Shown here piece after piece: positions 1 through 39,515 of a stretch of DNA of 64,000 bases. The translations under genes were made by a program, and so were the position numbers. The notes below the pieces were generated by a model. The model did not search any database and was not told the DNA's origin. It worked only from the letters and a program-made list of their open reading frames with translations. How positions within the stretch are numbered: the first letter of the stretch is position 1; the number at the start of each line of letters is the position of its first letter. Where the stretch lies: assembly GCA_053919585.1 (NCBI GenBank), contig CM132790.1; one strand, written 5' to 3'. This stretch comes from Euprymna scolopes (taxonomy: Eukaryota).

Positions 1-3000
1 TGCTTCTTCTAATTCAATGGAATCTGTTGGAATTGGAACAGCAATTTCTGTTTCCTCTTGCATAATTTCATGTTCTGCAGGAGAATCGATACTGACACCG
101 GAAACAGGCACACCCGTCTCCTCAGTGACTACGATGACGCGGTCTTCATCCAATGTTTCTGGAAGTTCAACTGGTATATTGTCCACTTCGTTTTTCTCAT
201 CAATCACTATTTTTTCATCAATCTCATGTTCGTCTAAAGCTATATTCTCTGTTGGAGTTATGTCTTTCGCAGCAGAAATTAGCATTTCCTCGCCCTCTGT
301 AAGAATCGGTTCGGAAACCTGAGCAAAGTCAACGTCTTCTGATTGTGTGTGTGACGCTTGCGTAATTTCGGGCAAATTTGTGTCGTCAAGTTCGACTTCA
401 AGTGGACATTCGGTAGATTTTATTTCAGAAGGTAAATCAATGTTGTCAGTATCAAGTGTGTCTAGTTGTTTCTCAATATCCTCTACTATTTCACACTGAT
501 CACCAGCATCCACTGTTTCAGTGAAACTTGGTAAGTCCTCGTGAAAGACATTATCTGGCAGGACATTACACTCAGCTTCAACATTATTTTCAGTCTCATT
601 CAAATTAAGGTCAGTCTCCTCAAGATTTCCTAACTGAGTTGTAATTTCATCTTCGCCTTCAGGATCCACCACAATCTCTTCTTCAGTCTCAACTTTAGGT
701 TCACGCTTCTTAAACAGATTTTCGAAGAAACGTTTCACCGGATTCTCTTTCTTTTCATCTGACTTTGATGTTTCTTCAGTTATTTCGATTATTTCTTCAT
801 CGTTCATAGTAATTTCAACACATTCCTCTTCAGGTTTTGTTTGATTATCAGACAATTCTTCCTTTAAAACCAATTCTTCCTCTTCTTCTTCGTCTTCGGG
901 ATCAATTTGAGTATTTTCGAAATTGTTAAGATGCTCTTTTATTTCATTCGAATCTGTTAGATTCTCTTGATTCTCCATCGGGATTATAGAAGGTATTGTG
1001 GATTCTGAAGTCTCTTCAACTTCTGATATCCCAGTTACAGTTATATCTTCTATTTCCCGTTCTACGAAAATTTCACCTTCATCAAATTTTTCCGGAAGAT
1101 GTACACCAACTTCTTCTTCTGGTAAAATATCTTCAAACTCATTTGGCAACTGAACTTCAAATTCGGTGTTTTCTTTTCCTTCTACTCTTTCTTCTGTTTC
1201 TTCTTTTTCTTCAAGTGTTTCTTTGACTTCTTCAAAATCCCTCTCCTCCGTTTTCTCTATCGGATCTCGTTTTTTAAACAGATTATCAAAGAATCGTTTA
1301 ACAGGATTTTCTTTCTTTTCTTTTGGTTTTGGAATTTCGTCAATAATTTCTAACATTTCTTCATTTTCTGTAATCGTTTCAGCTGCTTCGTCATTTGCCA
1401 TTTTATCCTCTATTAATTTTTCAGCTAAAGTCAGTTCATTTTCTTCCACTGCCAGAGTCTCTTCGGCAACACTTGGAATACTTTTAACTTTTGAATCCTC
1501 TTCTGTTGTTATTTCTAAATCATTTTCCTCACTTGCATCTGCTATATCATTTACTGTCATAATTACATCTTCTGCAATTGGTATTGGCTGTTCTGTAGAT
1601 TCGCTAATTTCTAAATCTGAATTCTGACCATTTAATTTATCTTCTAGTTCTGCTTCTTCTAATTCAATGGAATCTGTTGGAATTGGAACAGCAATTTCTG
1701 TTTCCTCTTGCATAATTTCAAGTTCTGCAGGAGAATCGATACTGACACCGGAAACAGGCACACCCGACTCCTCAGTGACTACGATGATGCGGTCTTCATC
1801 CAATGTTTCTGGAAGTTCAACTGGTATATTGTCCACTTCGTTTTTCTCATCAATCACTATTTTTTCATCAATCTCATGTTCGTCTAAAGCTATGTGCTCT
1901 GTTGGAGTTATGTCTTCCCCAGCAGAAATTAGCATTTCCTCGCCCTCTGTAAGAATCGGTTCGGAAACCTGAGCAAAGTCAACGTCTTCTGATTGTGTGT
2001 GTGACGCTTGCGTAATTTCGGGCAAATTTGTGTCGTCAAGTTCGACTTCAAGTGGACATTCGGTAGATTTTATTTCAGAAGGTAAATCAATGTTGTCAGT
2101 ATCAAGTGTGTCTAGTTGTTTCTCAATATCCTCTACTATTTCACACTGATCACCAGCATCCACTGTTTCAGTGAAACTTGGTAAGTCCTCGTGAAAGACA
2201 TTATCTGGTAGGACATTACACTCAGCTTCAACATTATTTTCAGTCTCATTCAAATTAAGGTCAGTCTCCTCAAGATTTCCTAACTGAGTTGTAATTTCAT
2301 CTTCGCCTTCAGGATCCACCACAATCTCTTCTTCAGTCTCAACTTTAGGTTCACGCTTCTTAAACAGATTTTCGAAGAAACGTTTCACCGGATTCTCTTT
2401 CTTTTCATCTGACTTTGATGTTTCTTCAGTTATTTCGATTATTTCTTCATCGTTCATAGTAATTTCAACACATTCCTCTTCAGGTTTTGTTTGATTATCA
2501 GACAATTCTTCCTTTAAAACCAATTCTTCCTCTTCTTCTTCGTCTTCGGGATCAATTTGAGTATTTTCGAAATTGTTAAGATGCTCTTTTATTTCATTCG
2601 AATCTGTTAGATTCTCTTGATTCTCCATCGGGATTATAGAAGGTATTGTGGATTCTGAAGTCTCTTCAACTTCTGATATCCCAGTTACAGTTATATCTTC
2701 TATTTCCCGTTCTACGAAAATTTCACCTTCATCAAATTTTTCCGGAAGATGTACACCAACTTCTTCTTCTGGTAAAATATCTTCAAACTCATTTGGCAAC
2801 TGAACTTCAAATTCGGTGTTTTCTTTTCCTTCTACTCTTTCTTCTGTTTCTTCTTTTTCTTCAAGTGTTTCTTTGACTTCTTCAAAATCCCTCTCCTCCG
2901 TTTTCTCTATCGGATCTCGTTTTTTAAACAGATTATCAAAGAATCGTTTAACAGGATTTTCTTTCTTTTCTTTTGGTTTTGGAATTTCGTCAATAATTTC

Positions 3001-6000
3001 TAACATTTCTTCATTTTCTGTAATCGTTTCAGCTGCTTCGTCATTTGCCATTTTATCCTCTATTAATTCTTCAGCTAAAGTCAGTTCATTTTCTTCCACT
3101 GCCAGAGTCTCTTCGGCAACACTTGGAATACTTTTAACTTTTGAATCCTCTTCTGTTGTTATTTCTAAATCATTTTCCTCACTTGCATCTGCTATATCAT
3201 TTACTGTCATAATTACATCTTCTGCAATTGGTATTGGCTGTTCTGTAGATTCGCTAATTTCTAAATCTGAATTCTGACCATTTAATTTATCTTCTAGTTC
3301 TGCTTCTTCTAATTCAATGGAATCTGTTGGAATTGGAACAGCAATTTCTGTTTCCTCTTGCATAATTTCATGTTCTTCAGGAGAATCGATACTGACACCG
3401 GAAACAGGCACACCCGACTCCTCAGTGACTACGATGACGCGGTCTTCATCCAATGTTTCTGGAAGTTCAACTGGTATATTGTCCACTTCGTTTTTCTCAT
3501 CAATCACTATTTTTTCATCAATCTCATGTTCGTCTAAAGCTATATTCTCTGTTGGAGTTATGTCTTTCGCAGCAGAAATTAGCATTTCCTCGCCCTCTGT
3601 AAGAATCGGTTCGGAAACCTGAGCAAAGTCAACGTCTTCTGATTGTGTGTGTGACGCTTGCGTAATTTCGGGCAAATTTGTGTCGTCAAGTTCGACTTCA
3701 AGTGGACATTCGGTAGATTTTATTTCAGAAGGTAAATCAATGTTGTCAGTATCAAGTGTGTCTAGTTGTTTCTCAATATCCTCTACTATTTCACACTGAT
3801 CACCAGCATCCACTGTTTCAGTGAAACTTGGTAAGTCCTCGTGAAAGACATTATCTGGCAGGACATTACACTCAGCTTCAACATTATTTTCAGTCTCATT
3901 CAAATTAAGGTCAGTCTCCTCAAGATTTCCTAACTGAGTTGTAATTTCATCTTCGCCTTCAGGATCCACCACAATCTCTTCTTCAGTCTCAACTTTAGGT
4001 TCACGCTTCTTAAACAGATTTTCGAAGAAACGTTTCACCGGATTCTCTTTCTTTTCATCTGACTTTGATGTTTCTTCAGTTATTTCGATTATTTCTTCAT
4101 CGTTCATAGTAATTTCAACACATTCCTCTTCAGGTTTTGTTTGATTATCAGACAATTCTTCCTTTAAAACCAATTCTTCCTCTTCTTCTTCGTCTTCGGG
4201 ATCAATTTGAGTATTTTCGAAATTGTTAAGATGCTCTTTTATTTCATTCGAATCTGTTAGATTCTCTTGATTCTCCATCGGGATTATAGAAGGTATTGTG
4301 GATTCTGAAGTCTCTTCAACTTCTGATATCCCAGTTACAGTTATATCTTCTATTTCCCGTTCTACGAAAATTTCACCTTCATCAAATTTTTCCGGAAGAT
4401 GTACACCAACTTCTTCTTCTGGTAAAATATCTTCAAACTCATTTGGCAACTGAACTTCAAATTCGGTGTTTTCTTTTCCTTCTACTCTTTCTTCTGTTTC
4501 TTCTTTTTCTTCAAGTGTTTCTTTGACTTCTTCAAAATCCCTCTCCTCCGTTTTCTCTATCGGATCTCGTTTTTTAAACAGATTATCAAAGAATCGTTTA
4601 ACAGGATTTTCTTTCTTTTCTTTTGGTTTTGGAATTTCGTCAATAATTTCTAACATTTCTTCATTTTCTGTAATCGTTTCAGCTGCTTCGTCATTTGCCA
4701 TTTTATCCTCTATTAATTCTTCAGCTAAAGTCAGTTCATTTTCTTCCACTGCCAGAGTCTCTTCGGCAACACTTGGAATACTTTTAATTTTTGAATCCTC
4801 TTCTGTTGTTATTTCTAAATCATTTTCCTCACTTGCATCTGCTATATCATTTACTGTCATAATTACATCTTCTGCAATTGGTATTGGCTGTTCTGTAGAT
4901 TCGCTAATTTCTAAATCTGAATTCTGACCATTTAATTTATCTTCTAGTTCTGCTTCTTCTAATTCAATGGAATCTGTTGGAATTGGAACAGCAATTTCTG
5001 TTTCCTCTTGCATAATTTCATGTTCTGCAGGAGAATCGATACTGACACCGGAAACAGGCACACCCGACTCCTCAGTGACTACGATGATGCGGTCTTCATC
5101 CAATGTTTCTGGAAGTTCAACTGGTATATTGTCCACTTCGTTTTTCTCATCAATCACTATTTTTTCATCAATCTCATGTTCGTCTAAAGCTATATTCTCT
5201 GTTGGAGTTATGTCTTCCCCAGCAGAAATTAGCATTTCCTCGCCCTCTGTAAGAATCGGTTCGGAAACCTGAGCAAAGTCAACGTCTTCTGATTGTGTGT
5301 GTGACGCTTGCGTAATTTCGGGCAAATTTGTGTCGTCAAGTTCGACTTCAAGTGGACATTCGGTAGATTTTATTTCAGAAGGTAAATCAATGTTGTCAGT
5401 ATCAAGTGTGTCTAGTTGTTTCTCAATATCCTCTACTATTTCACACTGATCACCAGCATCCACTGTTTCAGTGAAACTTGGTAAGTCCTCGTGAAAGACA
5501 TTATCTGGCAGAACATTACACTCAGCTTCAACATTATTTTCAGTCTCATTCAAATTAAGGTCAGTCTCCTCAAGATTTCCTAACTGAGTTGTAATTTCAT
5601 CTTCGCCTTCAGGATCCACCACAATCTCTTCTTCAGTCTCAACTTTAGGTTCACGCTTCTTAAACAGATTTTCGAAGAAACGTTTCACCGGATTCTCTTT
5701 CTTTTCATCTGACTTTGATGTTTCTTCAGTTATTTCGATTATTTCTTCATCGTTCATAGTAATTTCAACACATTCCTCTTCAGGTTTTGTTTGATTATCA
5801 GACAATTCTTCCTTTAAAACCAATTCTTCCTCTTCTTCTTCGTCTTCGGGATCAATTTGAGTATTTTCGAAATTGTTAAGATGCTCTTTTATTTCATTCG
5901 AATCTGTTAGATTCTCTTGATTCTCCATCGGGATTATAGAAGGTATTGTGGATTCTGAAGTCTCTTCAACTTCTGATATCCCAGTTACAGTTATATCTTC

Positions 6001-9000
6001 TATTTCCCGTTCTACGAAAATTTCACCTTCATCAAATTTTTCCGGAAGATGTACACCAACTTCTTCTTCTGGTAAAATATCTTCAAACTCATTTGGCAAC
6101 TGAACTTCAAATTCGGTGTTTTCTTTTCCTTCTACTCTTTCTTCTGTTTCTTCTTTTTCTTCAAGTGTTTCTTTGACTTCTTCAAAATCCCTCTCCTCCG
6201 TTTTCTCTATCGGATCTCGTTTTTTAAACAGATTATCAAAGAATCGTTTAACAGGATTTTCTTTCTTTTCTTTTGGTTTTGGAATTTCGTCAATAATTTC
6301 TAACATTTCTTCATTTTCTGTAATCGTTTCAGCTGCTTCGTCATTTGCCATTTTATCCTCTATTAATTCTTCAGCTAAAGTCAGTTCATTTTCTTCCACT
6401 GCCACAGTCTCTTCGGCAACACTTGGAATACTTTTAATTTTTGAATCCTCTTCTGTTGTTATTTCTAAATCATTTTCCTCACTTGCATCTGCTATATCAT
6501 TTACTGTCATAATTACATCTTCTGCAATTGGTATTGGCTGTTCTGTAGATTCGCTAATTTCTAAATCTGAATTCTGACCATTTAATTTATCTTCTAGTTC
6601 TGCTTCTTCTAATTCAATGGAATCTGTTGGAATTGGAACAGCAATTTCTGTTTCCTCTTGCATAATTTCAAGTTCTGCAGGAGAATCGATACTGACACCG
6701 GAAACAGGCACACCCGTCTCCTCAGTGACTACAATGACGCGGTCTTCATCCAATGTTTCTGGAAGTTCAACTGGTATATTGTCCACTTCGTTTTTCTCAT
6801 CAATCACTATTTTTTCATCAATCTCATGTTCGTCTAAAGCTATGTGCTCTGTTGGAGTTATGTCTTCCGCAGCAGAAATTAGCATTTCCTCGCCCTCTGT
6901 AAGAATCGGTTCGGAAACCTGAGCAAAGTCAACGTCTTCTGATTGTGTGTGTGACGCTTGCGTAATTTCGGGCAAATTTGTGTCGTCAAGTTCGACTTCA
7001 AGTGGACATTCGGTAGATTTTATTTCAGAAGGTAAATCAATGTTGTCAGTATCAAGTGTGTCTAGTTGTTTCTCAATATCCTCTACTATTTCACACTGAT
7101 CACCAGCATCCACTGTTTCAGTGAAACTTGGTAAGTCCTCGTGAAAGACATTATCTGGCAGAACATTACACTCAGCTTCAACATTATTTTCAGTCTCATT
7201 CAAATTAAGGTCAGTCTCCTCAAGATTTCCTAACTGAGTTGTAATTTCATCTTCGCCTTCAGGATCCACCACAATCTCTTCTTCAGTCTCAACTTTAGGT
7301 TCACGCTTCTTAAACAGATTTTCGAAGAAACGTTTCACCGGATTCTCTTTCTTTTCATCTGACTTTGATGTTTCTTCAGTTATTTCGATTATTTCTTCAT
7401 CGTTCATAGTAATTTCAACACATTCCTCTTCAGGTTTTGTTTGATTATCAGACAATTCTTCCTTTAAAACCAATTCTTCCTCTTCTTCTTCGTCTTCGGG
7501 ATCAATTTGAGTATTTTCGAAATTGTTAAGATGCTCTTTTATTTCATTCGAATCTGTTAGATTCTCTTGATTCTTCATCGGGATTATAGAAGGTATTGTG
7601 GATTCTGAAGTCTCTTCAACTTCTGATATCCCAGTTACAGTTATATCTTCTATTTCCCGTTCTACGAAAATTTCACCTTCATCAAATTTTTCCGGAAGAT
7701 GTACACCAACTTCTTCTTCTGGTAAAATATCTTCAAACTCATTTGGCAACTGAACTTCAAATTCGGTGTTTTCTTTTCCTTCTACTCTTTCTTCTGTTTC
7801 TTCTTTTTCTTCAAGTGTTTCTTTGACTTCTTCAAAATCCCTCTCCTCCGTTTTCTCTATCGGATCTCGTTTTTTAAACAGATTATCAAAGAATCGTTTA
7901 ACAGGATTTTCTTTCTTTTCTTTTGGTTTTGGAATTTCGTCAATAATTTCTAACATTTCTTCATTTTCTGTAATCGTTTCAGCTGCTTCGTCATTTGCCA
8001 TTTTATCCTCTATTAATTCTTCAGCTAAAGTCAGTTCATTTTCTTCCACTGCCAGAGTCTCTTCGGCAACACTTGGAATACTTTTAATTTTTGAATCCTC
8101 TTCTGTTGTTATTTCTAAATCATTTTCCTCACTTGCATCTGCTATATCATTTACTGTCATAATTACATCTTCTGCAATTGGTATTGGCTGTTCTGTAGAT
8201 TCGCTAATTTCTAAATCTGAATTCTGACCATTTAATTTATCTTCTAGTTCTGCTTCTTCTAATTCAATGGAATCTGTTGGAATTGGAACAGCAATTTCTG
8301 TTTCCTCTTGCATAATTTCAAGTTCTGCAGGAGAATCGATACTGACACCGGAAACAGGCACACCCGTCTCCTCAGTGACTACAATGACGCGGTCTTCATC
8401 CAATGTTTCTGGAAGTTCAACTGGTATATTGTCCACTTCGTTTTTCTCATCAATCACTATTTTTTCATCAATCTCATGTTCGTCTAAAGCTATGTGCTCT
8501 GTTGGAGTTATGTCTTCCGCAGCAGAAATTAGCATTTCCTCGCCCTCTGTAAGAATCGGTTCGGAAACCTGAGCAAAGTCAACGTCTTCTGATTGTGTGT
8601 GTGACGCTTGCGTAATTTCGGGCAAATTTGTGTCGTCAAGTTCGACTTCAAGTGGACATTCGGTAGATTTTATTTCAGAAGGTAAATCAATGTTGTCAGT
8701 ATCAAGTGTGTCTAGTTGTTTCTCAATATCCTCTACTATTTCACACTGATCACCAGCATCCACTGTTTCAGTGAAACTTGGTAAGTCCTCGTGAAAGACA
8801 TTATCTGGTAGGACATTACACTCAGCTTCAACATTATTTTCAGTCTCATTCAAATTAAGGTCAGTCTCCTCAAGATTTCCTAACTGAGTTGTAATTTCAT
8901 CTTCGCCTTCAAGATCCACCACAATCTCTTCTTCAGTCTCAACTTTAGGTTCACGCTTCTTAAACAGATTTTCGAAGAAACGTTTCACCGGATTCTCTTT

Positions 9001-12000
9001 CTTTTCATCTGACTTTGATGTTTCTTCAGTTATTTCGATTATTTCTTCATCGTTCATAGTAATTTCAACACATTCCTCTTCAGGTTTTGTTTGATTATCA
9101 GACAATTCTTCCTTTAAAACCAATTCTTCCTCTTCTTCTTCGTCTTCGGGATCAATTTGAGTATTTTCGAAATTGTTAAGATGCTCTTTTATTTCATTCG
9201 AATCTGTTAGATTCTCTTGATTCTCCATCGGGATTATAGAAGGTATTGTGGATTCTGAAGTCTCTTCAACTTCTGATATCCCAGTTACAGTTATATCTTC
9301 TATTTCCCGTTCTACGAAAATTTCACCTTCATCAAATTTTTCCGGAAGATGTACACCAACTTCTTCTTCTGGTAAAATATCTTCAAACTCATTTGGCAAC
9401 TGAACTTCAAATTCGGTGTTTTCTTTTCCTTCTACTCTTTCTTCTGTTTCTTCTTTTTCTTCAAGTGTTTCTTTGACTTCTTCAAAATCCCTCTCCTCCG
9501 TTTTCTCTATCGGATCTCGTTTTTTAAACAGATTATCAAAGAATCGTTTAACAGGATTTTCTTTCTTTTCTTTTGGTTTTGGAATTTCGTCAATAATTTC
9601 TAACATTTCTTCATTTTCTGTAATCGTTTCAGCTGCTTCGTCATTTGCCATTTTATCCTCTATTAATTCTTCAGCTAAAGTCAGTTCATTTTCTTCCACT
9701 GCCAGAGTCTCTTCGGCAACACTTGGAATACTTTTAATTTTTGAATCCTCTTCTGTTGTTATTTCTAAATCATTTTCCTCACTTGCATCTGCTATATCAT
9801 TTACTGTCATAATTACATCTTCTGCAATTGGTATTGGCTGTTCTGTAGATTCGCTAATTTCTAAATCTGAATTCTGACCATTTAATTTATCTTCTAGTTC
9901 TGCTTCTTCTAATTCAATGGAATTTGTTGGAATTGGAACAGCAATTTCTGTTTCCTCTTGCATAATTTCAAGTTCTGCAGGAGAATCGATACTGACACCG
10001 GAAACAGGCACACCCGTCTCCTCAGTGACTACAATGACGCGGTCTTCATCCAATGTTTCTGGAAGTTCAACTGGTATATTGTCCACTTCGTTTTTCTCAT
10101 CAATCACTATTTTTTCATCAATCTCATGTTCGTCTAAAGCTATGTGCTCTGTTGGAGTTATGTCTTCCGCAGCAGAAATTAGCATTTCCTCGCCCTCTGT
10201 AAGAATCGGTTCGGAAACCTGAGCAAAGTCAACGTCTTCTGATTGTGTGTGTGACGCTTGCGTAATTTCGGGCAAATTTGTGTCGTCAAGTTCGACTTCA
10301 AGTGGACATTCGGTAGATTTTATTTCAGAAGGTAAATCAATGTTGTCAGTATCAAGTATGTCTAGTTGTTTCTCAATATCCTCTACTATTTCACACTGAT
10401 CACCAGCATCCACTGTTTCAGTGAAACTTGGTAAGTCCTCGTGAAAGACATTATCTGGTAGGACATTACACTCAGCTTCAACATTATTTTCAGTCTCATT
10501 CAAATTAAGGTCAGTCTCCTCAAGATTTCCTAACTGAGTTGTAATTTCATCTTCGCCTTCAGGATCCACCACAATCTCTTCTTCAGTCTCAACTTTAGGT
10601 TCACGCTTCTTAAACAGATTTTCGAAGAAACGTTTCACCGGATTCTCTTTCTTTTCATCTGACTTTGATGTTTCTTCAGTTATTTCGATTATTTCTTCAT
10701 CGTTCATAGTAATTTCAACACATTCCTCTTCAGGTTTTGTTTGATTATCAGACAATTCTTCCTTTAAAACCAATTCTTCCTCTTCTTCTTCGTCTTCGGG
10801 ATCAATTTGAGTATTTTCGAAATTGTTAAGATGCTCTTTTATTTCATTCGAATCTGTTAGATTCTCTTGATTCTCCATCGGGATTATAGAAGGTATTGTG
10901 GATTCTGAAGTCTCTTCAACTTCTGATATCCCAGTTACAGTTATATCTTCTATTTCCCGTTCTACGAAAATTTCACCTTCATCAAATTTTTCCGGAAGAT
11001 GTACACCAACTTCTTCTTCTGGTAAAATATCTTCAAACTCATTTGGCAACTGAACTTCAAATTCGGTGTTTTCTTTTCCTTCTACTCTTTCTTCTGTTTC
11101 TTCTTTTTCTTCAAGTGTTTCTTTGACTTCTTCAAAATCCCTCTCCTCCGTTTTCTCTATCGGATCTCGTTTTTTAAACAGATTATCAAAGAATCGTTTA
11201 ACAGGATTTTCTTTCTTTTCTTTTGGTTTTGGAATTTCGTCAATAATTTCTAACATTTCTTCATTTTCTGTAATCGTTTCAGCTGCTTCGTCATTTGCCA
11301 TTTTATCCTCTATTAATTCTTCAGCTAAAGTCAGTTCATTTTCTTCCACTGCCAGAGTCTCTTCGGCAACACTTGGAATACTTTTAATTTTTGAATCCTC
11401 TTCTGTTGTTATTTCTAAATCATTTTCCTCACTTGCATCTGCTATATCATTTACTGTCATAATTACATCTTCTGCAATTGGTATTGGCTGTTCTGTAGAT
11501 TCGCTAATTTCTAAATCTGAATTCTGACCATTTAATTTATCTTCTAGTTCTGCTTCTTCTAATTCAATGGAATCTGTTGGAATTGAAACAGCAACTTCTG
11601 TTTCCTCTTGCATAATTTCATGTTCTGCAGGAGAATCGATACTGACACCGGAAACAGGCACACCCGACTCCTCAGTGACTACGATGACGCGGTCTTCATC
11701 CAATGTTTCTGGAAGTTCAACTGGTATATTGTCCACTTCGTTTTTCTCATCAATCACTATTTTTTCATCAATCTCATGTTCGTCTAAAGCTATATTCTCT
11801 GTTGGAGTTATGTCTTTCGCAGCAGAAATTAGCATTTCCTCGCCCTCTGTAAGAATCGGTTCGGAAACCTGAGCAAAGTCAACGTCTTCTGATTGTGTGT
11901 GTGACGCTTGCGTAATTTCGGGCAAATTTGTGTCGTCAAGTTCGACTTCAAGTGGACATTCGGTAGATTTTATTTCAGAAGGTAAATCAATGTTGTCAGT

Positions 12001-15000: not shown

Positions 15001-18000
15001 CAATGTTTCTGGAAGTTCAACTGGTATATTGTCCACTTCGTTTTTCTCATCAATCACTATTTTTTTATCAATCTCATGTTCTTCTAAAGCTATGTGCTCT
15101 GTTGGAGTTATGTCTTCCGCAGCAGAAATTAGCATTTCCTCGCTCTCTGTAAGAATCGGTTCGGAAACCTGAGCAAAGTCAACGTCTTCTGATTGTGTGT
15201 GTGACGCGTGCGTAATTTCGGGCAAATTTGTGTCGTCAAGTTCGACTTCAAGTGGACATTCGGTAGATTTTATTTCAGAAGGTAAATCAATGTTGTCAGT
15301 ATCAAGTGTGTCTAGTTGTTTCTCAATATCCTCTACTATTTCACACTGATCACCAGCATCCACTGTTTCAGTGAAACTTGGTAAGTCCTCGTGAAAGACA
15401 TTATCTGGTAGGACATTACACTCAGCTTCAACATTATTTTCAGTCTCATTCAAATTAAGGTCAGTCTCCTCAAGATTTCCTAACTGAGTTGTAATTTCAT
15501 CTTCGCCTTCAGGATCCACCACAATCTCTTCTTCAGTCTCAACTTTAGGTTCACGCTTCTTAAACAGATTTTCGAAGAAACGTTTCACCGGATTCTCTTT
15601 CTTTTCATCTGACTTTGATGTTTCTTCAGTTATTTCGATTATTTCTTCATCGTTCATAGTAATTTCAACACATTCCTCTTCAGGTTTTGTTTGATTATCA
15701 GACAATTCTTCCTTTAAAACCAATTCTTCCTCTTCTTCTTCGTCTTCGGGATCAATTTGAGTATTTTCGAAATTGTTAAGATGCTCTTTTATTTCATTCG
15801 AATCTGTTAGATTCTCTTGATTCTCCATCGGGATTATAGAAGGTATTGTGGATTCTGAAGTCTCTTCAACTTCTGATATCCCAGTTACAGTTATATCTTC
15901 TATTTCCCGTTCTACGAAAATTTCACCTTCATCAAATTTTTCCGGAAGATGTACACCAACTTCTTCTTCTGGTAAAATATCTTCAAACTCATTTGGCAAC
16001 TGAACTTCAAATTCGGTGTTTTCTTTTCCTTCTACTCTTTCTTCTGTTTCTTCTTTTTCTTCAAGTGTTTCTTTGACTTCTTCAAAATCCCTCTCCTCCG
16101 TTTTCTCTATCGGATCTCGTTTTTTAAACAGATTATCAAAGAATCGTTTAACAGGATTTTCTTTCTTTTCTTTTGGTTTTGGAATTTCGTCAATAATTTC
16201 TAACATTTCTTCATTTTCTGTAATCGTTTCAGCTGCTTCGTCATTTGCCATTTTATCCTCTATTAATTCTTCAGCTAAAGTCAGTTCATTTTCTTCCACT
16301 GCCAGAGTCTCTTCGGCAACACTTGGAATACTTTTAATTTTTGAATCCTCTTCTGTTGTTATTTCTAAATCATTTTCCTCACTTGCATCTGCTATATCAT
16401 TTACTGTCATAATTACATCTTCTGCAATTGGTATTGGCTGTTCTGTAGATTCGCTAATTTCTAAATCTGAATTCTGACCATTTAATTTATCTTCTAGTTC
16501 TGCTTCTTCTAATTCAATGGAATCTGTTGGAATTGAAACAGCAACTTCTGTTTCCTCTTGCATAATTTCATGTTCTGCAGGAGAATCGATACTGACACCG
16601 GAAACAGGCACACCCGACTCCTCAGTGACTACGATGACGCGGTCTTCATCCAATGTTTCTGGAAGTTCAACTGGTATATTGTCCACTTCGTTTTTCTCAT
16701 CAATCACTATTTTTTCATCAATCTCATGTTCGTCTAAAGCTATATTCTCTGTTGGAGTTATGTCTTTCGCAGCAGAAATTAGCATTTCCTCGCCCTCTGT
16801 AAGAATCGGTTCGGAAACCTGAGCAAAGTCAACGTCTTCTGATTGTGTGTGTGACGCTTGCGTAATTTCGGGCAAATTTGTGTCGTCAAGTTCGACTTCT
16901 AGTGGACATTCGGTAGATTTTATTTCAGAAGGTAAATCAATGTTGTCAGTATCAAGTGTGTCTAGTTGTTTCTCAATATCCTCTACTATTTCACACTGAT
17001 CACCAGCATCCACTGTTTCAGTGAAACTTGGTAAGTCCTCGTGAAAGACATTATCTGGCAGGACATTACACTCAGCTTCAACATTATTTTCAGTCTCATT
17101 CAAATTAAGGTCAGTCTCCTCAAGATTTCCTAACTGAGTTGTAATTTCATCTTCGCCTTCAGGATCCACCACAATCTCTTCTTCAGTCTCAACTTTAGGT
17201 TCACGCTTCTTAAACAGATTTTCGAAGAAACGTTTCACCGGATTCTCTTTCTTTTCATCTGACTTTGATGTTTCTTCAGTTATTTCGATTATTTCTTCAT
17301 CGTTCATAGTAATTTCAACACATTCCTCTTCAGGTTTTGTTTGATTATCAGACAATTCTTCCTTTAAAACCAATTCTTCCTCTTCTTCTTCGTCTTCGGG
17401 ATTAATTTGAGTATTTTCGAAATTGTTAAGATGCTCTTTTATTTCATTCGAATCTGTTAGATTCTCTTGATTCTCCATCGGGATTATAGAAGGTATTGTG
17501 GATTCTGAAGTCTCTTCAACTTCTGATATCCCAGTTACAGTTATATCTTCTATTTCCCGTTCTACGAAAATTTCACCTTCATCAAATTTTTCCGGAAGAT
17601 GTACACCAACTTCTTCTTCTGGTAAAATATCTTCAAACTCATTTGGCAACTGAACTTCAAATTCGGTGTTTTCTTTTCCTTCTACTCTTTCTTCTGTTTC
17701 TTCTTTTTCTTCAAGTGTTTCTTTGACTTCTTCAAAATCCCTCTCCTCCGTTTTCTCTATCGGATCTCGTTTTTTAAACAGATTATCAAAGAATCGTTTA
17801 ACAGGATTTTCTTTCTTTTCTTTTGGTTTTGGAATTTCGTCAATAATTTCTAACATTTCTTCATTTTCTGTAATCGTTTCAGCTGCTTCGTCATTTGCCA
17901 TTTTATCCTCTATTAATTCTTCAGCTAAAGTCAGTTCATTTTCTTCCACTGCCAGAGTCTCTTCGGCAACACTTGGAATACTTTTAATTTTTGAATCCTC

Positions 18001-19042
18001 TTCTGTTGTTATTTCTAAATCATTTTCCTCACTTGCATCTGCTATATCATTTACTGTCATAATTACATCTTCTGCAATTGGTATTGGCTGTTCTGTAGAT
18101 TCGCTAATTTCTAAATCTGAATTCTGACCATTTAATTTATCTTCTAGTTCTGCTTCTTCTAATTCAATGGAATCTGTTGGAATTGAAACAGCAACTTCTG
18201 TTTCCTCTTGCATAATTTCATGTTCTGCAGGAGAATCGATACTGACACCGGAAACAGGCACACCCGACTCCTCAGTGACTACGATGACGCGGTCTTCATC
18301 CAATGTTTCTGGAAGTTCAACTGGTATATTGTCCACTTCGTTTTTCTCATCAATCACTATTTTTTTATCAATCTCATGTTCGTCTAAAGCTATGTGCTCT
18401 GTTGGAGTTATGTCTTCCGCAGCAGAAATTAGCATTTCCTCGCCCTCTGTAAGAATCGGTTCGGAAACCTGAGCAAAGTCAACGTCTTCTGATTGTGTGT
18501 GTGACGCTTGCGTAATTTCGGGCAAATTTGTGTCGTCAAGTTCGACTTCAAGTGGACATTCGGTAGATTTTATTTCAGAAGGTAAATCAATGTTGTCAGT
18601 ATCAAGTGTGTCTAGTTGTTTCTCAATATCCTCTACTATTTCACACTGATCACCAGCATCCACTGTTTCAGTGAAACTTGGTAAGTCCTCGTGAAAGACA
18701 TTATCTGGAAAGACATTACACTCAGCTTCAACATTATTTTCAGTCTCATTCAAATTAAGGTCAGTCTCCTCAAGATTTCCTAACTGAGTTGTAATTTCAT
18801 CTTCGCCTTCAGGATCCACCACAATCTCTTCTTCAGTCTCAACTTTAGGTTCACGCTTCTTAAACAGATTTTCGAAGAAACGTTTCACCGGATTCTCTTT
18901 CTTTTTATCTGACTTTGGTTTTTCTTCAGTTATTTCGGTTATTTCTTCATCGTTCATAGTAATTTCAACACATTCCTCTTCAGGTTTTGTTTGATTATCA
19001 GACAATTCTTCCTTTAAAACCAATTCTTCCTCTTCCTCTTCG
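1..19042 (-). repeat. Coding tandem array: 1,650-bp (550-aa) unit x about 11.5, continuing past the window start
   Basis: Units start at 1, 1651, 3301 ... 18151 and differ by only a few substitutions each, with no indels. Similarity ends at about 19042. Confidence 0.98.
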
Positions 19043-22000
19043 TATGCTGGTTTGTCTATGGAATCAATTTGAATATTTTTAATTTGCGATATTTCATCTT
19101 CACTAAGTTGTAACTTATTTACAACTTCAGATACATCTGTCTCTTTACTTTCGACCTTTGTTTTTTGTTTTTGAAACAAGTTATTGAAGAGACGACTTAC
19201 TGGGGTTTCAGTTCTCTTTTTGGCTGCAGTCTTCTCTTGAACCTCTATTATTTCTACGTTCTCCTCTTTGCGTTCTTCAACTTCATCAGCTTTATTTTTT
19301 TCTTTATTTTCGTCATTCAATTTTTGTCCGTCTTTTGTTGTTTTCTCGACGTTTTCCATTGATGTTTTCTTAAAATCCATTTCGTTGTCCGTTACTTTTT
19401 TTCCATTACGAACGTCTTGGTCGACTAGAGTACTTTTATCCTTCGCAATCATCTCTGCAGTCATGTGTGTTTCTTCTTCCGAAAATGCAGACATTTTTGC
19501 TTCCGAAGTCTGGATAGGATGTTTATCTACTGATTCTATGTCTTGTATGTTTGTATTTTCGCCGGCAATCTTGGTTTTGATCACTTCATCTGTCAGTTCA
19601 ACATCTAGTTCAATAACAGATTCAATACTCTGTTCACTCCCTTCTTCTGTTCCGTCACTATCTTCAATGTTTTTATTTATTTTATTTTTTTCCACAAACT
19701 TTTCCATTTTTGCCGGGATATTTTCGAAAGTATTGGTTTGTTCGATTAATTGCTCCTCACTAGTTATCCTCTTTCCATCACCTGAAGTAATATCTTGTGT
19801 TGGGATTATATTTTCTTTGTCAGAAATTGGCAATCCTTCAGATTCGGCAATTATCGGATCCAAAACCTGAGTTAAATTGGTGTCTTCTGATTCTTTTTGT
19901 GGCAATTGGGGAGTTTCGCCGAAAGCCGGATTCTGAATTTCGATTTCAATTTGCGTCTTATTCGTCTCGTTTTTCGTTGGTAAAATAATGTCGTCGTCGC
20001 ATTCATGTGTTTTGGTTTCAATATCTTCAATTACTTCACTTTCATCACGTACTGTTGAAACATGAACGGCAGACATATTTTCTCCTGTTTCAACATTCTT
20101 TTGAATCGGCACTTGAATTTCGTTTTCTTGAACGGGGGAAATCTTTACTTCAGTTCCGACGTTGGGCAATTGAATTTCTTTTTTTTGGTTGGCAGAAAGC
20201 TTTTCTTCAGTTTCGTCATGGGCTGCAATCGGCATTTGGATTTCGCTTTCTTGAACAGGGCACATCTTTTCTTCAATTTGGACATTGGGTTCAACCGGCA
20301 TTTTAATTTCGTTTTCTTGAATGGCAGGAAGCTTTTCTTCAGTTTCGATATTGGCTTCAATCGGTATTTTGATTTTGCTTTCTTGCCCATAACAAATCTT
20401 TTCTTCGTTGGGTTCAATCTGTAGTTGAATTTCGCTTTGTTGAACGGCAGAAATAGTTTGTTCAGTTTCGATATTGGATTCAACCGACACTGAAATTTCG
20501 TTTTCTTGAACGGCAGAAATAATTTGTCCAGTTTCGATATTGGATTCAGCTGAGTCTTGAATGTCGTTTTCTTGAACGACAGGAATCTTCTCTTCAGTTT
20601 CAATCTTTGGATCAGGTTTCTTAAGCAATTTACTGAAGAAACGACTAACTGGACTCTCCTTTTTATACCCTATTGGATTTGCTTTTTCTTCTATTACTTC
20701 TATTTTATCTTCCTTATCTTTATCATCAGGAGGCACTTCTATTTCTATTTGCTCTTCTAGCAAATTATCATTCAAACCGGTTTCATTTTCTTCTGTCACT
20801 GTGGCATTGATGTCGGCTGGAATATTTACTAAATCATTTTTAACTTCGACCAAATCTTTCGCCTGATCTTCTGAAGAAATATTATCTTCAACGTTTATAT
20901 GTTCATTATTATTTGCAGTCTCTTCTGATGATTCGCAAATATTCGTTTCAGAAGTCTGTGCAATATCAATATCTTCAAATTCTGTTGCTTCTGTTTGAGG
21001 GATCGCTTTGTCTGGGTCAACATCCGTAACACGTCCACGTTTTCTATTTCCTTCTGTTGGTTCTGAGATATTTGGCGGAGTAGGTTCTTCTTTATGTAAT
21101 GCTTTTGTCTCTACAATACACCCATCTTCATTATCTGTCAAGTCGGTCAGATTTTCAGGATTATCATTTGACTGGGCTGGTGCTTCAAGTTCCTTATTTT
21201 GATCGTCAAAAGTCTTTACTTCAATCTCGACTGGGAGTTCGCGTTTTTTAAACAATTTATCAAAGAAACGACTGACTGGACTTTCTTTCTTAGTTTCTAT
21301 TGGCTTTGGTGTTTCCTCTTTTATTTTTATCACTTCATCCCGGTCCTTGACATCTTCAATAGTTTCTTCCTTCTCGTACAGATCTTCTGGATGATTTTCG
21401 ACGGAAACTGTCTCATTTTCTTTCCTAGGCACGATTACTTCCTTTCTATGTTGTTTGTCTGAATCTTTAGAAACTTTATAATTGTCGTCAGCAACTTTTT
21501 CATCATTGCAAACGAAGACGAATGACTCATTATTTGTATTTGGATATTCTTCCGATTTCAAATCGGTTTCAGTTTGATCCTTTGTATTTTCAGTTACTGA
21601 GACTTCTATCTTTTTGCAAGTTGAATTCACATCATCGCCATCTTCATTCGTTTCATCAGGTAACGCGTCCACTGTTGTTAATTCCACCATTTGGCTTTCT
21701 TCTTTTAAATTGTCCTCACCTGACTGTGTTTTGATTTCTTCTGTGGCAGGCGAATATTTTAATGGACCAGTTGCAATATTCTTTGTCACATCTACATTTT
21801 TAGAAAATATCATTTGTAACTTCCTACGAATCTTCGAGAATTTTTTCAGTCCCGGTGTCTTATTAGCAGACACAACAGTGACATCTATGTCGTCCTGGCT
21901 TTCATTGGAAAAAGATGAAGACGGTGATTTTAAACCAGAATCATCAGAGATATTCTTTTCAGAACACATAGATTCTGATTCTTCCCCAGAGTCAAGCTTG

Positions 22001-24137
22001 AAAGGTTCGTTTCTGAACACTGAAGATCGCTGTTCGGTTAGTTCGTCTGATTCCTCATCCGTCTGATCCGTCTTGCCGATCGCTTCTAGTGATAACTCTA
22101 GGGAATCAACTTCCATGTCAGTATCTTCATTGTCACTGATTTGCTTCAAAGTGATATCGGCCATTTCCTGTTGGTCATCTGGTTCCAGATGAGATTTGTC
22201 AGGGTTTATCAAGAAGAAGGGATCCGCTTTTATCTTTTGATTTAGTTTGGTCTTTTCATTCTCGTTCGTTTCAATCTCGTCTTCTGACATTGTTTCAGCA
22301 TCATCGGTAATCGTGCGATTTAACTCTAACGAGTCCGTTTCCATGCTACTCGAATCATTTTCAGAATATTGGGATTCTTCGATCGTTTCAAGCAAAGGAA
22401 CATGGCGTTTCAAATCACTTTCTTCGTTTCGTATAAATGGTTTGACTGGTTCTGTTGGACATTCAATAGTACTTTCATTTAAAGAGTCAGTCTCCACTTT
22501 TTCCACCGGACTTTTAATATAAGGCTGTGTTTCCACATCTACAGGATTTTGAATGTAGTGTTGGGTTTTGACTTCCTCTGTCGGATTTTGAATAGAAGGT
22601 TGTGTTTCAACTTGATTTGCCAATATTTGAATGGGAGGTTGTGTTTTAGCTGTTTCTACCGGGTTTTGACTAGCAGGTTGTGTTTCGATTTCTTCTCCCT
22701 GATTTTGAACCGAAGGTTGTTCTACGCCTTCTTCTGTCGGGATTTCAACTGCTGTTTTTGTCTGAACATCATCTACCGGTATTTGACTGGAAGGTTTTAT
22801 TTCAATTTCATGAATTATAGGTTTCTCTTGCTCTGCCATTGAAGGTTTAGGACTTGTTGGTATAAGTGAATCTTCTGACTCAGGAGTTGACTTGCTCAGT
22901 TGTTCGATTGCATTTTGGGGTCTTTGTATTTTTGACGGGCTTTTTGAATCGGGTGGCAAATCTTTTTCTTCTGAGAGCTTTTCTGAGGTCACACAATCCT
23001 GAAAAAACTCTTTTATTTCGGATTCAGGAATTACATATTCTACTGACTTGCCTTCGCTTGTCAGAGAATCTCCCGTATCATTTTGGTCGCTTACCTCTCC
23101 ATCATCAGTTGAAACCGAATTTGGAGAATGTGGTATAATTTTTTTATGAATTGGTTTAAAGTCATCAATTTCTACTGGATCTGCGACCAGACGTGGAGCC
23201 AATGTTTCGAAGTCTTCTTCTTGTTGCCTCTTGTGTAAATCTTCAAGCTTCATCTTACATTCTTCAGGGAAATTCTCTAGACTTTCATGTTCGTCGGTGC
23301 TCGTGATTGTGCCAGAATTATTGTAAATGTCAGGAGATCCTTGTCTTGTGCTATCGCCTGATTCAAGTTTTGTAAACGTACTCGAGCTAATTTTAGAACA
23401 TGGTGAATTCCGTTCCGAGGAATAAATATCTAAGTTTGAAACCGGACTCGGATTCTCAGATTCTGTTCTGAGACTCGAAAGTGGCCAATCATAATAATTG
23501 TCTGCATTCATAGTTTCCGATTCGTCATCTGTGACATGTTGGCTTTCGTATTTTTCAGGCACATCAGACGATATTTGACTTGCTGGAGTCTCAGATGGCG
23601 ATTTGATTACCGATGTTGGAAAATTGTTTTGCCCTAAGATTGGTGTATTATCGTCACTTTGTGTACTTTCTGTGGAAGATAACGCATCATCATCTTTGGG
23701 ATGAAGCATCTTTGCTGCATCTTCTGTATGATTCTTGTCGCTGTCTTGGTTTTTATCACCCGTGATGATATCCATGGATGTTGATTTGTCAGGAGGTTTT
23801 TCTACTTCCGGCAAGGGATACTCTTGCGAAAACAAATTTTTTTCTCGTTCTGTAACGGAAGGTTTAGGACTTCTTGGTATGCGGGAAGCTTTCGACTCGA
23901 GATTCGACTTGCTTGGTTGTTCGGTTGCGGTTTGCGGTATTTGAGACAGATTATGAGAATCTAGCGGCAAATCTTTTGTTGCGTCTTCTTTTGGGTCATT
24001 CTTTGTTAGAGGTTTATCCGGAGCAGGTTTTTGTTTGATGGGAAGACGACTTTTAGATGATGATTCCGGACTATCGGATGAATCCGACTTTTTCCGTGAA
24101 GGGTAAACTGGACTGCCTTCAGGATCGGTCGGCGTCA
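1..24137 (-). CDS. Giant coding exon (>=24.1 kb, >=8,045 codons, 3'-partial) of an acidic, repeat-rich, probably disordered protein with periodic basic amphipathic helix motifs; orthology unknown
   Basis: The minus-strand acceptor reads tgcttttacttttttacag|TG ACG CCG ACC (CAG at 24140-24138, phase 1). The frame starts TPTDPEGSPVYPSRKKSDSS... and is the same frame at position 1 (...SIELEEA). Every segment I translated by hand was stop-free, and no terminated long minus ORF appears in the track, which fits a frame running off the edge. The repeat periods (1650, 66, 39 bp) are multiples of 3. There are no TE or microsatellite insertions. Confidence 0.92.
20050..20600 (-). repeat. Degenerate 66-bp (22-aa) coding repeat, about 8 copies, consensus ~ETEEKLPAVQENEIQMPVEPNI
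   Basis: The anchor ttcttga-like word recurs at about 20126, 20248, 20314, 20380, 20437, 20503 and 20569. The copies translate in the giant-exon frame. Confidence 0.85.
22510..22860 (-). repeat. Degenerate 39-bp (13-aa) coding repeat, about 9 copies (~ETQPSIQNPTEEV)
   Basis: ggttg recurs at about 22598, 22637, 22676 and 22715 (39-bp period), in frame with the giant exon. Confidence 0.8.
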
Positions 24138-24601
24138 CTGTAAAAAAGTAAAAGCATAGTTTTAATAAGAATTATAGCGAAACAAATTTATCATGGAAAC
24201 ACTTAATATATATTAGGCGAACCATGACCTGTTGAGTCAACATTGGTATTACATGCATTTAGTGCCTTCAATAAAATTAAATATATACGAGTAGATATGT
24301 AAGTTTATAAGAAGGCTGTAGCAATGTAGAATGCCAAGTTATTAAAATGTTCTTACGATGTTTTTTATTTTTTATTTTTTATTAAAAAAACGACGTTATT
24401 CTCGAAATATCAAAGACATTTACTATCCTGGTTATATTAAACAGTAGATCCATACTTACTATATGTGATTGATTTTGAAAAAATAAATAGATATACAAAG
24501 ATTTATAAAATCAACAAGACCTTCATTCGTTTGTCTGTTTTTGTCAATCCGTCACATCATATTATAACTCCGGTATTCTACATTGCTACAACCTACACTT
24601 G

Positions 24602-39400: not shown

Positions 39401-39515
39401 TATTCCCTGATTTGGACTTGCTGCTCTGATCTTGAGATTTTGACGCCGATGGAGTAGCGGGCTGTGAAGCCGATCGTGTTGGCCGGTTTGATTTGCTAGA
39501 ATCGGACTCACGGGC
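39401..39515 (-). CDS. 115-nt coding exon upstream of the giant exon (ARESDSSKSNRPTRSASQPATPSASKSQDQSSKSKSGN)
   Basis: Acceptor ttttgttttatttcag| and donor |gtgagt. The exon is open, phase 0 in and phase 1 out, matching the phase-1 giant exon (junction codon A|TG). Confidence 0.8.

What the first reader, a model, noticed from the sequence alone, without database searches (positions are those of the whole stretch)
1..24137. Hidden giant exon (>24 kb, >8,000 aa) encoding a beads-on-a-string protein: acidic disordered spacers with regularly spaced basic amphipathic helices
Seen: one frame runs from a canonical splice acceptor to the window edge, and the ORF track omits it because no stop was reached. 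The product is E/D/K/T/S/I/V-rich with no folded domain I can recognise. This 24 kb has no TE or microsatellite, while the neighbouring introns are saturated with them. Known: coding exons of this size are rare and occur in giant ankyrins, Futsch/MAP1, titin/sallimus-type proteins, AHNAK and mucins. The two upstream exons show no ZU5/UPA, Ig, spectrin or PDZ signature, so I cannot assign it to any of these. Inference: a possibly undescribed giant scaffold or spacer protein whose length is set by repeat number.
Basis: partly seen in the sequence, partly recalled or inferred. Interest (0 to 1): 0.9.

Follow-up and report, generated by a model that had tools for sequence, protein, structure and literature searches.

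The report
Giant repeat exon, F-box-like gene
The 24-kb open frame is a real, transcribed and spliced coding exon of a cephalopod gene whose cuttlefish counterpart is a 1,934-residue FBXO41-like F-box (ubiquitin-ligase adaptor) protein, and it is giant here only because a 1,650-bp coding unit was very recently copied about 12-13 times.

Summary
The minus strand is open for 8,057 codons (24171 to 1), while the other five frames carry 156-1,051 stops. An RNA contig covers 19042-24138 and then jumps at canonical splice sites, so the acceptor at 24137 is real.

Positions 1-19042 are 11.5 copies of a 1,650-bp (550-aa) unit, at least 98.9% identical and free of indels. DNA contig depth gives about 12.5 copies, so the array is neither an assembly artefact nor much longer than shown. 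Each unit is hyper-acidic (net charge -137), has no confident predicted fold, and carries two basic amphipathic motifs, PVKRFF(E/D)NLFKKR.

Among 1.84 billion representative proteins only two cephalopod proteins match. The complete cuttlefish transcript ends in an F-box plus a leucine-rich domain closest to mammalian FBXO41. One relative has the motif once and the other lacks it, so the giant size is a young, lineage-specific expansion. Differences between copies look neutral.

The F-box end of this gene lies beyond the window and was not seen. No paper found links FBXO41 to cephalopods. The same scan had already noted the array in another finding (s1-280061).

The parts
1..24137 (-). Window part of one giant coding exon (at least 8,045 codons). 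It runs off the window at position 1, so its 3' end was not seen.
   Evidence: Open frame with 0 stops. RNA contig X1 is continuous over 19042-24138, and the repeat part is present in RNA contigs at high depth.
24138..24139 (-). Splice acceptor AG (ttttttacag|TGACG) in front of the giant exon.
   Evidence: RNA contig X1 leaves the genome exactly here and continues in the exon at 32195.
1..19042 (-). Coding macrosatellite: 11.54 tandem units of 1,650 bp (550 aa), with no indels and at most 18 of 1,650 differences between units. The first (5'-most) unit is the most divergent.
   Evidence: Identity at a 1,650-nt lag is 0.98-1.00. Unit matrix: 34 variable columns, 8 synonymous and 27 non-synonymous changes. 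DNA contig depth is 227-235 in the repeat against 18-18.6 in the unique part, about 12.5 copies. Unit-to-unit junctions appear in both DNA and RNA contigs.
19043..24137 (-). Unique 5' part of the exon (about 1,698 codons), homologous to the cuttlefish and second cephalopod proteins.
   Evidence: phmmer E 1.3e-72 and 7.3e-49. tblastn of P0003 aa 223-1554 lies on 24105-20158.
23119..23220 (-). Conserved island 1, EEDFETLAPRLVADPVEIDDFKPIHKKIIPHSPN.
   Evidence: Nearly invariant in all three cephalopod sequences.
22975..23043 (-). Conserved island 2, VEYVIPESEIKEFFQDCVTSEKL.
   Evidence: Conserved in three species; the SEIKEFF..C(V/I)TSE core occurs a second time in both relatives.
21796..21918 (-). 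Conserved island 3, SSFSNESQDDIDVTVV...GLKKFSKIRRKLQMIFSKN (an acidic patch followed by a basic helix).
   Evidence: Three-species alignment.
21241..21279 (-). Diverged old copy of the basic amphipathic motif (PVSRFFDKLFKKR).
   Evidence: Motif scan.
20614..20652 (-). Diverged old copy of the motif (PVSRFFSKLLKKP).
19165..19203 (-). Diverged old copy of the motif (PVSRLFNNLFQKQ), just upstream of the array.
703..18891 (-). Span holding 23 identical-type motif copies, PVKRFF(E/D)NLFKKR, two per unit, spaced alternately 362 and 188 aa. First copy at 18853-18891, last at 703-741.
   Evidence: The motif has the highest helical hydrophobic moment in the unit (0.82, against mean 0.26 and sd 0.14) and forms the only basic islands. 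AlphaFold2 places short helices on both copies.
20104..20601 (-). Older in-frame 66-nt (22-aa) tandem repeats inside the unique part.
   Evidence: TRF, period 66/132, 70-78% matches.
22584..22720 (-). Older in-frame 39-nt (13-aa) tandem repeats.
   Evidence: TRF.
32195..32380 (-). Upstream coding exon (186 nt, phase 1-1; ...HIPQATAERMEIRARQRL...KSKMA). This is the exon actually spliced to 24137.
   Evidence: The 119-nt loose end of RNA contig X1 maps here. tblastn of P0003 aa 146-205.
39401..39515 (-). Upstream coding exon (ARESDSSKSNRPTRSASQPATPS...). Its phase fits 32380 and, if that exon is skipped, 24137.
   Evidence: Splice sites read directly. Weak match to P0003 aa 84-113, E 0.003. No RNA evidence was obtained.
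42688..42808 (-). Upstream coding exon (..NKSCQAKKPSRSQSLPPFVGASYIGTMNAADGKHPYLDRI).
   Evidence: 77% identical to P0003 aa 43-82, E 2e-17. Splice sites read. No RNA evidence was obtained.

Best explanation
The frame is most of one huge coding exon of the cephalopod orthologue of an FBXO41-like F-box gene. F-box proteins are the substrate-recognising subunits of SCF ubiquitin ligases. The exon encodes the long, hyper-acidic, intrinsically disordered N-terminal arm of the protein. This arm also evolves by lineage-specific tandem repeats in the relatives. In this species, a 550-aa module carrying two copies of a short basic amphipathic helix (PVKRFFxNLFKKR) was amplified to about 12-13 head-to-tail copies, most likely by unequal recombination, and has been kept uniform or is simply very young. 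The arm is therefore about 8,000 aa or more, against about 1,600 aa in cuttlefish.

Proposed working: the arm is a multivalent tether. About 26-28 identical basic helices would act as docking sites for a partner that binds basic amphipathic helices, such as Ca2+/calmodulin-type proteins or acidic membranes. The polyanionic spacers of 170-350 residues would keep the sites apart and soluble. Together they would concentrate or position the C-terminal F-box/leucine-rich module.

Shown: the open frame, transcription, the splice at 24137, the repeat anatomy and copy number, orthology to the cuttlefish gene, and the F-box/FBXO41-like tail in the cuttlefish transcript. Inferred: translation of the full length, an F-box tail in this species (it lies beyond window position 1), and what the motif binds.
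For: The frame is open for 8,057 codons, with 156-1,051 stops in the other frames. A spliced RNA contig runs 19042-24138 and on to 32195, and repeat contigs are abundant in two RNA runs. The array has 11.54 units at 98.9% identity or more without indels. DNA depth ratio is about 12.5. Only two homologues were found in 1.84e9 representatives, both cephalopod, E 1e-72 and 7e-49. The upstream exons and three conserved islands are colinear with the cuttlefish protein. The cuttlefish transcript contig has a complete 1,934-aa ORF with a Pfam F-box (7.9e-11). The model of its tail (pTM 0.68) matches FBXO41 residues 542-873 with E 2.5e-22, TM 0.80 and 34% identity; the next families reach only E about 5e-8 and 16% identity. 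The unit aligns to the single motif-bearing segment of P0002 (aa 836-1063, E 2.6e-7) and to older diverged copies upstream in the same exon. The motif has the top helical hydrophobic moment and forms the only basic islands; net charge is -137 per unit. The unit has no confident fold (pLDDT 40.6) but helices at the motifs. FBXO41 is an SCF subunit acting through its F-box (PMC6546786, PMC8971942).
Against: The 3' end of the exon and any F-box exons of this species were not seen. The NCBI cuttlefish model (P0001) ends without the F-box, so isoforms lacking it may exist. No zinc finger like that of mammalian FBXO41 was detected in the cephalopod N-terminal part. Differences between copies look neutral: 27 of 35 non-synonymous against 80% expected, p 0.67, and 0 stops against 1.7 expected. 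Nothing therefore shows that the extra copies are needed. The motif has no Pfam match, its partner is a guess, and there is no protein-level evidence. RNA depth on the repeat is 30-80 times that of the unique part, against 12.5 times in DNA. This could mean extra transcripts that start inside the array rather than 3' bias.
Confidence: 0.6

Rival explanations
1. The array is a functionally neutral or mildly harmful young coding macrosatellite. A disordered exon tolerated a runaway expansion, and the extra copies add nothing and may vary or be lost between individuals. The gene identity is the same as in the best explanation.
For: Units are at least 98.9% identical and the ratio of synonymous to non-synonymous changes fits random change. 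One relative has the motif once and the other lacks it, and their proteins are about 1,900 aa. Long internal exons encoding disorder are known to gain tandem repeats often (PMC12457776).
Against: The amplified unit contains the one clearly helix-forming, motif-like element, present as older diverged copies too. The array is transcribed at high depth. Neutrality between such young copies cannot be told from weak constraint with only 35 changes.
Confidence: 0.25
2. The exon encodes a stand-alone giant acidic scaffold. In this species the main transcript would end after the array by a stop and polyadenylation, and would not carry an F-box module.
For: The annotated cuttlefish model P0001 ends without the F-box and the next gene model (279 aa) is separate. 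The repeat-to-unique RNA depth ratio exceeds the DNA ratio, which is compatible with unusual transcript ends.
Against: The cuttlefish transcript contig joins the arm to the F-box in one complete ORF. The split cuttlefish annotation looks like a gene-model error.
Confidence: 0.1
3. The array is an assembly artefact, either inflated or collapsed, so the 24-kb frame does not exist as such in the animal.
For: Near-identical 1.65-kb repeats are hard to assemble. The raw-read runs X30-X32 give noisier ratios of 18-23.
Against: DNA contig depth of 227-235 against 18-18.6 gives about 12.5 copies, and the window shows 11.54. Units carry distinct variant patterns and not one cloned copy. X30-X32 rest on only about 8-12 unique-part reads each and are linker-bearing ligation libraries.
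Confidence: 0.03
4. It is a member of a known family of acidic scaffolds with basic motifs (AKAP12/gravin, MARCKS-like, AHNAK, giant ankyrin, mucin).
For: The weak language-model neighbours are AKAP12, AHNAK, CRACD and CARMIL, with scores of 0.62 or less.
Against: No Pfam match at E<=1. There is no WxSxK motif and only one W in 8,057 residues. S+T+P make up 19%. The only sequence homologues are the cephalopod F-box gene.
Confidence: 0.02

Closest known systems
FBXO41 (F-box only protein 41), the neuron-specific SCF ubiquitin-ligase subunit of vertebrates
   Same: The tail of the cuttlefish orthologue (F-box plus leucine-rich solenoid) matches FBXO41 residues 542-873 with Foldseek E 2.5e-22, TM 0.80 and 34% identity, far above any other F-box family. 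Similar proteins exist in a cnidarian. Both have a long N-terminal part in front of the F-box.
   Different: Mammalian FBXO41 is about 875 aa, with a zinc finger and a coiled coil at the N-terminus (PMC6546786). The cephalopod N-terminal part is acidic, disordered and unrelated by Pfam. Here it reaches 8,000 aa or more through a 12-13-fold repeat. The F-box end of the window's own gene was not seen.
Uncharacterised Acanthosepion (Sepia) pharaonis protein CAE1141063.1 / A0A812AI81 and its full transcript form (P0003)
   Same: It is the orthologue. The upstream exons are colinear (77% identity in one), three conserved islands are shared, and phmmer gives E 1.3e-72.
   Different: It has 1,598 aa (model) or 1,934 aa (transcript), no 550-aa array and no PVxRFF motif. 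It carries the F-box tail.
AKAP12/gravin and other acidic scaffolds with short basic membrane- or calmodulin-binding motifs
   Same: It works alike on paper: a long acidic disordered chain with repeated short basic, partly helical motifs. AKAP12 uses polybasic and WxSxK motifs and binds Ca2+/calmodulin (PMC7670535). It is the nearest named language-model neighbour.
   Different: There is no WxSxK and no Pfam WSK hit. The scores of 0.54-0.58 are uninformative. There is no sequence homology.
Giant single exons encoding disordered repeats (giant ankyrin-B/G exon, AHNAK, mucin central exons)
   Same: One very long coding exon encodes a mostly unfolded chain, and its length depends on internal repeats. 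Long exons are prone to tandem repeats (PMC7401806, PMC12457776).
   Different: The family is unrelated. The units are much longer (550 aa) and almost identical. The expansion is species- or lineage-specific. The host gene is probably an E3-ligase adaptor.

Membership tests
Cephalopod FBXO41-like F-box gene (orthologue of P0001/P0003) | Unique reciprocal-type sequence homology and colinear exons with the cuttlefish gene | tested here: met
   There are only 2 hits in 1.84e9 representatives (E 1.3e-72, 7.3e-49). Exons at 42688-42808, 39401-39515 and 32195-32380 and the giant exon follow the order of P0003. Three conserved islands are shared.
FBXO41-like F-box proteins | F-box motif (SKP1-binding) present in the orthologue | tested here: met
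   P0003 aa 1614-1651: PF12937 7.9e-11 and PF00646 1.3e-7, both above the curated cut-offs. PDB F-box hits to FBXL17, FBXL3 and FBXL2.
FBXO41-like F-box proteins | C-terminal leucine-rich solenoid like FBXO41 residues 542-873, in the orthologue | tested here: met
   AF2 model pTM 0.68. Foldseek against Swiss-Prot: FBXO41 of mouse and human, E 2.5e-22, TM 0.80-0.81, 34% identity over 338 aa.
FBXO41-like F-box proteins | F-box and leucine-rich tail encoded by the window's own gene | not testable with these tools
   The gene runs off the window at position 1. No annotated protein or transcript of this species was found.
FBXO41 (vertebrate architecture) | N-terminal zinc finger and coiled coil (PMC6546786) | tested here: not met
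   Pfam finds only the F-box in P0003 and nothing in the window exon. Coiled coil was not specifically tested.
Giant ankyrins | ANK repeats, ZU5/UPA and death domain flanking the giant exon | tested here: not met
   No Pfam hit in the exon or in the complete orthologue.
AKAP12/gravin | WxSxK (WSK) motifs, Pfam PF03832 | tested here: not met
   No W.S.K pattern and a single W in 8,057 aa. No PF03832 hit at E<=1.
AHNAK | About 128-aa central repeats and an N-terminal PDZ | tested here: not met
   The unit is 550 aa. No Pfam hit. Atlas similarity is 0.55 or less.
Mucins | Pro/Thr/Ser-rich repeats and a signal peptide | tested here: not met
   T 7.7%, S 5.9% and P 5.7%, against E+D 30.6%. The N-terminus of the orthologue is hydrophilic, with no leader seen on reading it.
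Titin/sallimus and MAP1/Futsch | Ig/Fn3 modules; MAP1 heavy- and light-chain homology | tested here: not met
   No Pfam family at E<=1 in 2,800 aa scanned. No such homologue among all representatives.

The most novel reading that the evidence does not exclude
A cephalopod makes an F-box (SCF ubiquitin-ligase adaptor) protein of roughly 9,000-10,500 residues, which would be by far the largest F-box protein known. Its N-terminal arm is a polyanion (net charge about -2,000) studded with about 26-28 identical basic amphipathic docking helices. The arm would have been created within a very short evolutionary time by a 1.65-kb coding macrosatellite inside one exon of 26 kb or more. Its copy number would tune the reach or valency of an FBXO41-like ligase.
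Probability: 0.3. Interest if true: 0.7.

Novelty: new variant of a known kind. Interest (0 to 1): 0.5.

Why it matters
If the full chain is made, this would be among the longest coding exons and the largest E3-ligase adaptor described. It would also be a clean natural case of a disordered protein arm growing five-fold almost at once by amplifying a module that carries a short binding motif. That makes two questions testable. Does motif valency or arm length of an F-box adaptor matter? How fast can coding macrosatellites remodel a protein? It also gives a first handle on the cephalopod relative of FBXO41, a neuronal ligase subunit whose substrates remain largely unidentified. Practically, it flags a gene that annotation pipelines have missed here or split in cuttlefish.

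Tried and rejected
1. A word-index homologue search with the whole 8,045-aa product (region 1-1700) found nothing. The length filter excluded the roughly 1,900-aa relatives, which the exhaustive phmmer search then found.
2. Searches with the cuttlefish tail, meant to find this species' own F-box end, returned only a 274-aa fragment from an unidentified run (P0004, 66% identical) and P0001 itself. P0004's contig shares no DNA with the window, so it could not be assigned to this species.
3. Genomic DNA of the two relatives' loci was not available.
4. Raw poly-A runs X21 and X22 laid no reads.
5. I first read the RNA repeat-to-unique depth ratio (30-80x) as 60-80 copies, and rejected that after DNA depth gave about 12.5.
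6. I first took the run sizes as read totals to argue for extreme expression, and dropped that because the figures are contig letters.
7. FFAT, PP1 (RVxF) and WH2/thymosin readings of the motifs were considered by eye. They were dropped because the consensus does not fit and Pfam gives no hit.
8. Atlas neighbours (AKAP12, the glutamate-rich part of CNGB1, AHNAK, CRACD/CARMIL) scored 0.47-0.62, which is below any useful level.
9. Positive selection in the variable patch was tested. Clustering is real (16 of 34 variable columns in 16% of the unit, p 3e-5), but the non-synonymous excess is not significant.
10. The first coding exon (P0003 aa 1-42) was not found in the window.


Full report
OBSERVATION. 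The minus strand of 1-24171 is open for 8,057 codons without a stop. The other five frames of the same stretch carry 156-1,051 stops. From base composition alone, log10 of the chance of no stop is about -52.7 for the 1,698 unique codons and about -19.6 for one 550-codon repeat unit. This is coding sequence and not a chance frame. The product has 22% E and 8.5% D, is rich in I/T/V/L/K/N/S/P, and contains one W in 8,057 residues. Pfam finds no domain in 2,800 residues scanned. Within 1-24137, Tandem Repeats Finder reports only in-frame coding repeats. The flanking introns hold an (AG)30 tract, many (TA)n-type tracts, a retroviral-type integrase ORF, LINE reverse-transcriptase and endonuclease fragments and a mariner remnant.

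TRANSCRIPTION AND SPLICING. Run X1 carries a 5,219-nt contig that lies on 19042-24138 and then continues for 119 nt. Those 119 nt map uniquely to 32195 onward. The genome there reads ...AAAATGGCCG|gtaagt, and at the giant exon ttttttacag|TGACG. The contig is therefore spliced cDNA, and the acceptor at 24137 is real. The frame runs ...KSKMA-V-TPTDPEGS across the junction. Two more upstream exons, 39401-39515 and 42688-42808, have canonical splice sites and compatible phases. They match the cuttlefish protein in the right order: 77% identity with E 2e-17, and E 0.003. I have no RNA evidence for these two. The first coding exon was not found in the window. The repeat part is present in RNA contigs of X1 and of the poly-A run X10. 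X10 includes a 1,680-nt contig that closes on itself across the unit-to-unit junction.

ANATOMY. Positions 1-19042 are 11.54 head-to-tail copies of a 1,650-bp (550-aa) unit. Identity at a lag of 1,650 nt is 0.98-1.00. The eleven full units have no indels and differ at no more than 18 of 1,650 positions. The 5'-most unit is the most divergent, and the most similar pairs are often not neighbours. Of 35 changes, 27 are non-synonymous, against 80% expected for random change (p 0.67). No change creates a stop, against 1.7 expected. The copies therefore show no measurable constraint, and the 19-kb open frame in the array is not in itself evidence of selection. Sixteen of the 34 variable columns fall within 16% of the unit (p 3e-5). 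This confirms the mosaic variable patch noted earlier in the scan (s1-280061).

Each unit has a net charge of -137. Its only basic islands are two copies of PVKRFF(E/D)NLFKKR, spaced alternately 362 and 188 residues. Hydrophobic residues fall at positions i, i+3, i+4, i+7 and i+8. The motif has the highest helical hydrophobic moment in the unit, 0.82 against a mean of 0.26 and sd of 0.14. A single-sequence AlphaFold2 model of a unit has mean pLDDT 40.6 and pTM 0.16, with short helices on both motifs. This is weak evidence, but it fits disorder with local helices. The unique part (19043-24137) carries three older, diverged motif copies. It also carries 22-aa and 13-aa in-frame repeats.

COPY NUMBER. 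In DNA run X25 the repeat contigs have word depth 227-235 and the unique part 18.0-18.6, a ratio of about 12.5. The array in the window is therefore about right and should end one to a few units beyond position 1. Three raw-read runs give ratios of 18-23. Each rests on only about 8-12 reads in the unique part, and the libraries carry ligation linkers, so I give them little weight. In RNA the ratio is 30-80. That exceeds the DNA ratio and remains unexplained. It could reflect 3' bias on a very long mRNA, or extra transcripts that start inside the array.

WHAT GENE IT IS. An exhaustive phmmer search with the first 1,200 residues of the exon, against 1.84 billion representative proteins, found only two proteins. 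One is an unnamed protein of the cuttlefish Acanthosepion pharaonis (P0001, E 1.3e-72). The other is a 1,936-aa single-ORF call from another assembly (P0002, E 7.3e-49). Three islands are nearly invariant among the three sequences. A cuttlefish transcript contig in the same 90% cluster as P0001 carries a complete 1,934-aa ORF, P0003. P0003 has a Pfam F-box at 1614-1651, above the curated cut-offs, followed by a leucine-rich region. A model of that tail (pTM 0.68) matches mouse and human FBXO41 residues 542-873 with E 2.5e-22, TM 0.80 and 34% identity. All other F-box families score E about 5e-8 or worse with about 16% identity. Cluster representatives at 30-37% identity include a cnidarian protein. 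FBXO41 is a neuron-specific subunit of an SCF ubiquitin ligase that assembles through its F-box. Its mammalian N-terminal part holds a zinc finger and a coiled coil (PMC6546786, PMC8971942).

The window's gene is therefore best read as the orthologue of a cephalopod FBXO41-like gene, and the giant exon as the N-terminal arm of that protein. The cuttlefish annotation appears to split this gene. P0001 lacks the F-box, and a 279-aa model follows 150 bp downstream on the same strand.

ORIGIN OF THE ARRAY. The unit aligns to the one motif-bearing segment of P0002 (aa 836-1063, E 2.6e-7; motif ESPFSRFFNKLFSKRDPEV). It also aligns at 27-47% identity to older copies upstream in the same exon. The cuttlefish protein has no such motif. 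P0002 has its own unrelated 9-10-aa repeat. The arm is thus a hot spot for lineage-specific repeats, and the 12-13-fold array is a recent event in this lineage.

WHAT IS NOT SHOWN. The 3' end of the exon and the F-box exons of this species lie beyond the window. No annotated protein or transcript of this species turned up. Translation of the full chain, the tissue of expression and the partner of the motif are all unknown. The calmodulin or acidic-membrane idea rests only on the general behaviour of basic amphipathic helices and on the analogy with AKAP12-type scaffolds (PMC7670535). This protein is not a member of that family: it has no WxSxK motif and no Pfam hit.

VERDICT. This is a real giant exon in a gene not described in the literature: no paper links FBXO41 and cephalopods. 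It is not a new kind of protein family. It is a known kind of thing, a long disordered exon inflated by tandem repeats (PMC12457776), in an unusual host gene and at an unusual scale.

Noticed in passing
window 29117-29235 (-): Full-length match to 5S rRNA (Rfam RF00001, 70 bits against a gathering score of 38, model positions 1-120) inside the intron between the 32.2-kb exon and the giant exon. It could be a 5S gene copy, a pseudogene or a 5S-derived SINE.
   Followed up: no
window 25235-27187 (+): A 651-codon open frame with an integrase zinc-binding domain and an rve core (Pfam 1.4e-18, 1.2e-10). It is the pol end of an LTR retrotransposon, about 1.1 kb upstream of the giant exon's acceptor, in its intron and on the opposite strand.
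   Followed up: partly
window 30757-31392 (+), 34311-35882 (-), 40639-41518 (-): LINE reverse-transcriptase and endonuclease fragments, and a mariner/Mos1-type transposase remnant (HTH domains), in the introns.
   Followed up: partly
window 17400-19042 compared with 19043-24137: RNA contig depth on the repeat is 30-80 times that of the unique 5' part (X1: about 7,700-9,900 against 124; X10: 584 against about 20). DNA gives about 12.5 times. The cause is unexplained: 3' bias on a very long mRNA, or additional transcripts that start inside the array.
   Followed up: partly
window 598-868 of each 1,650-nt unit (for example about 18174-18444 in the first unit): Variable positions between units cluster here (16 of 34, p 3e-5) and occur as shared blocks among non-adjacent units. 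The pattern looks like a gene-conversion or unequal-exchange mosaic.
   Followed up: partly
relatives P0001/P0003 (cuttlefish) and P0002: The public cuttlefish gene model lacks the F-box tail that the transcript contig has, and a separate 279-aa model sits 150 bp downstream on the same strand, so the gene is probably split in annotation. P0002 carries its own run of about 12 copies of a 9-10-aa repeat (NEYSSEPII-type), which is absent here.
   Followed up: partly
window 33284-33439, 47297-47439, 49972-50104, 53063-53221, 53762-53914, 57052-57201, 57905-58057: Seven runs of N of 133-159 bases, all in introns or upstream sequence. Left as they are.
   Followed up: no
runs X30-X32 laid on 17400-23300: Many reads carry the palindromic linker AGGTTCGTCCATCGATCGATGGACGAACCT. 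These 'GENOMIC OTHER' libraries are therefore ligation-junction libraries, and their depth is a poor measure of copy number.
   Followed up: no
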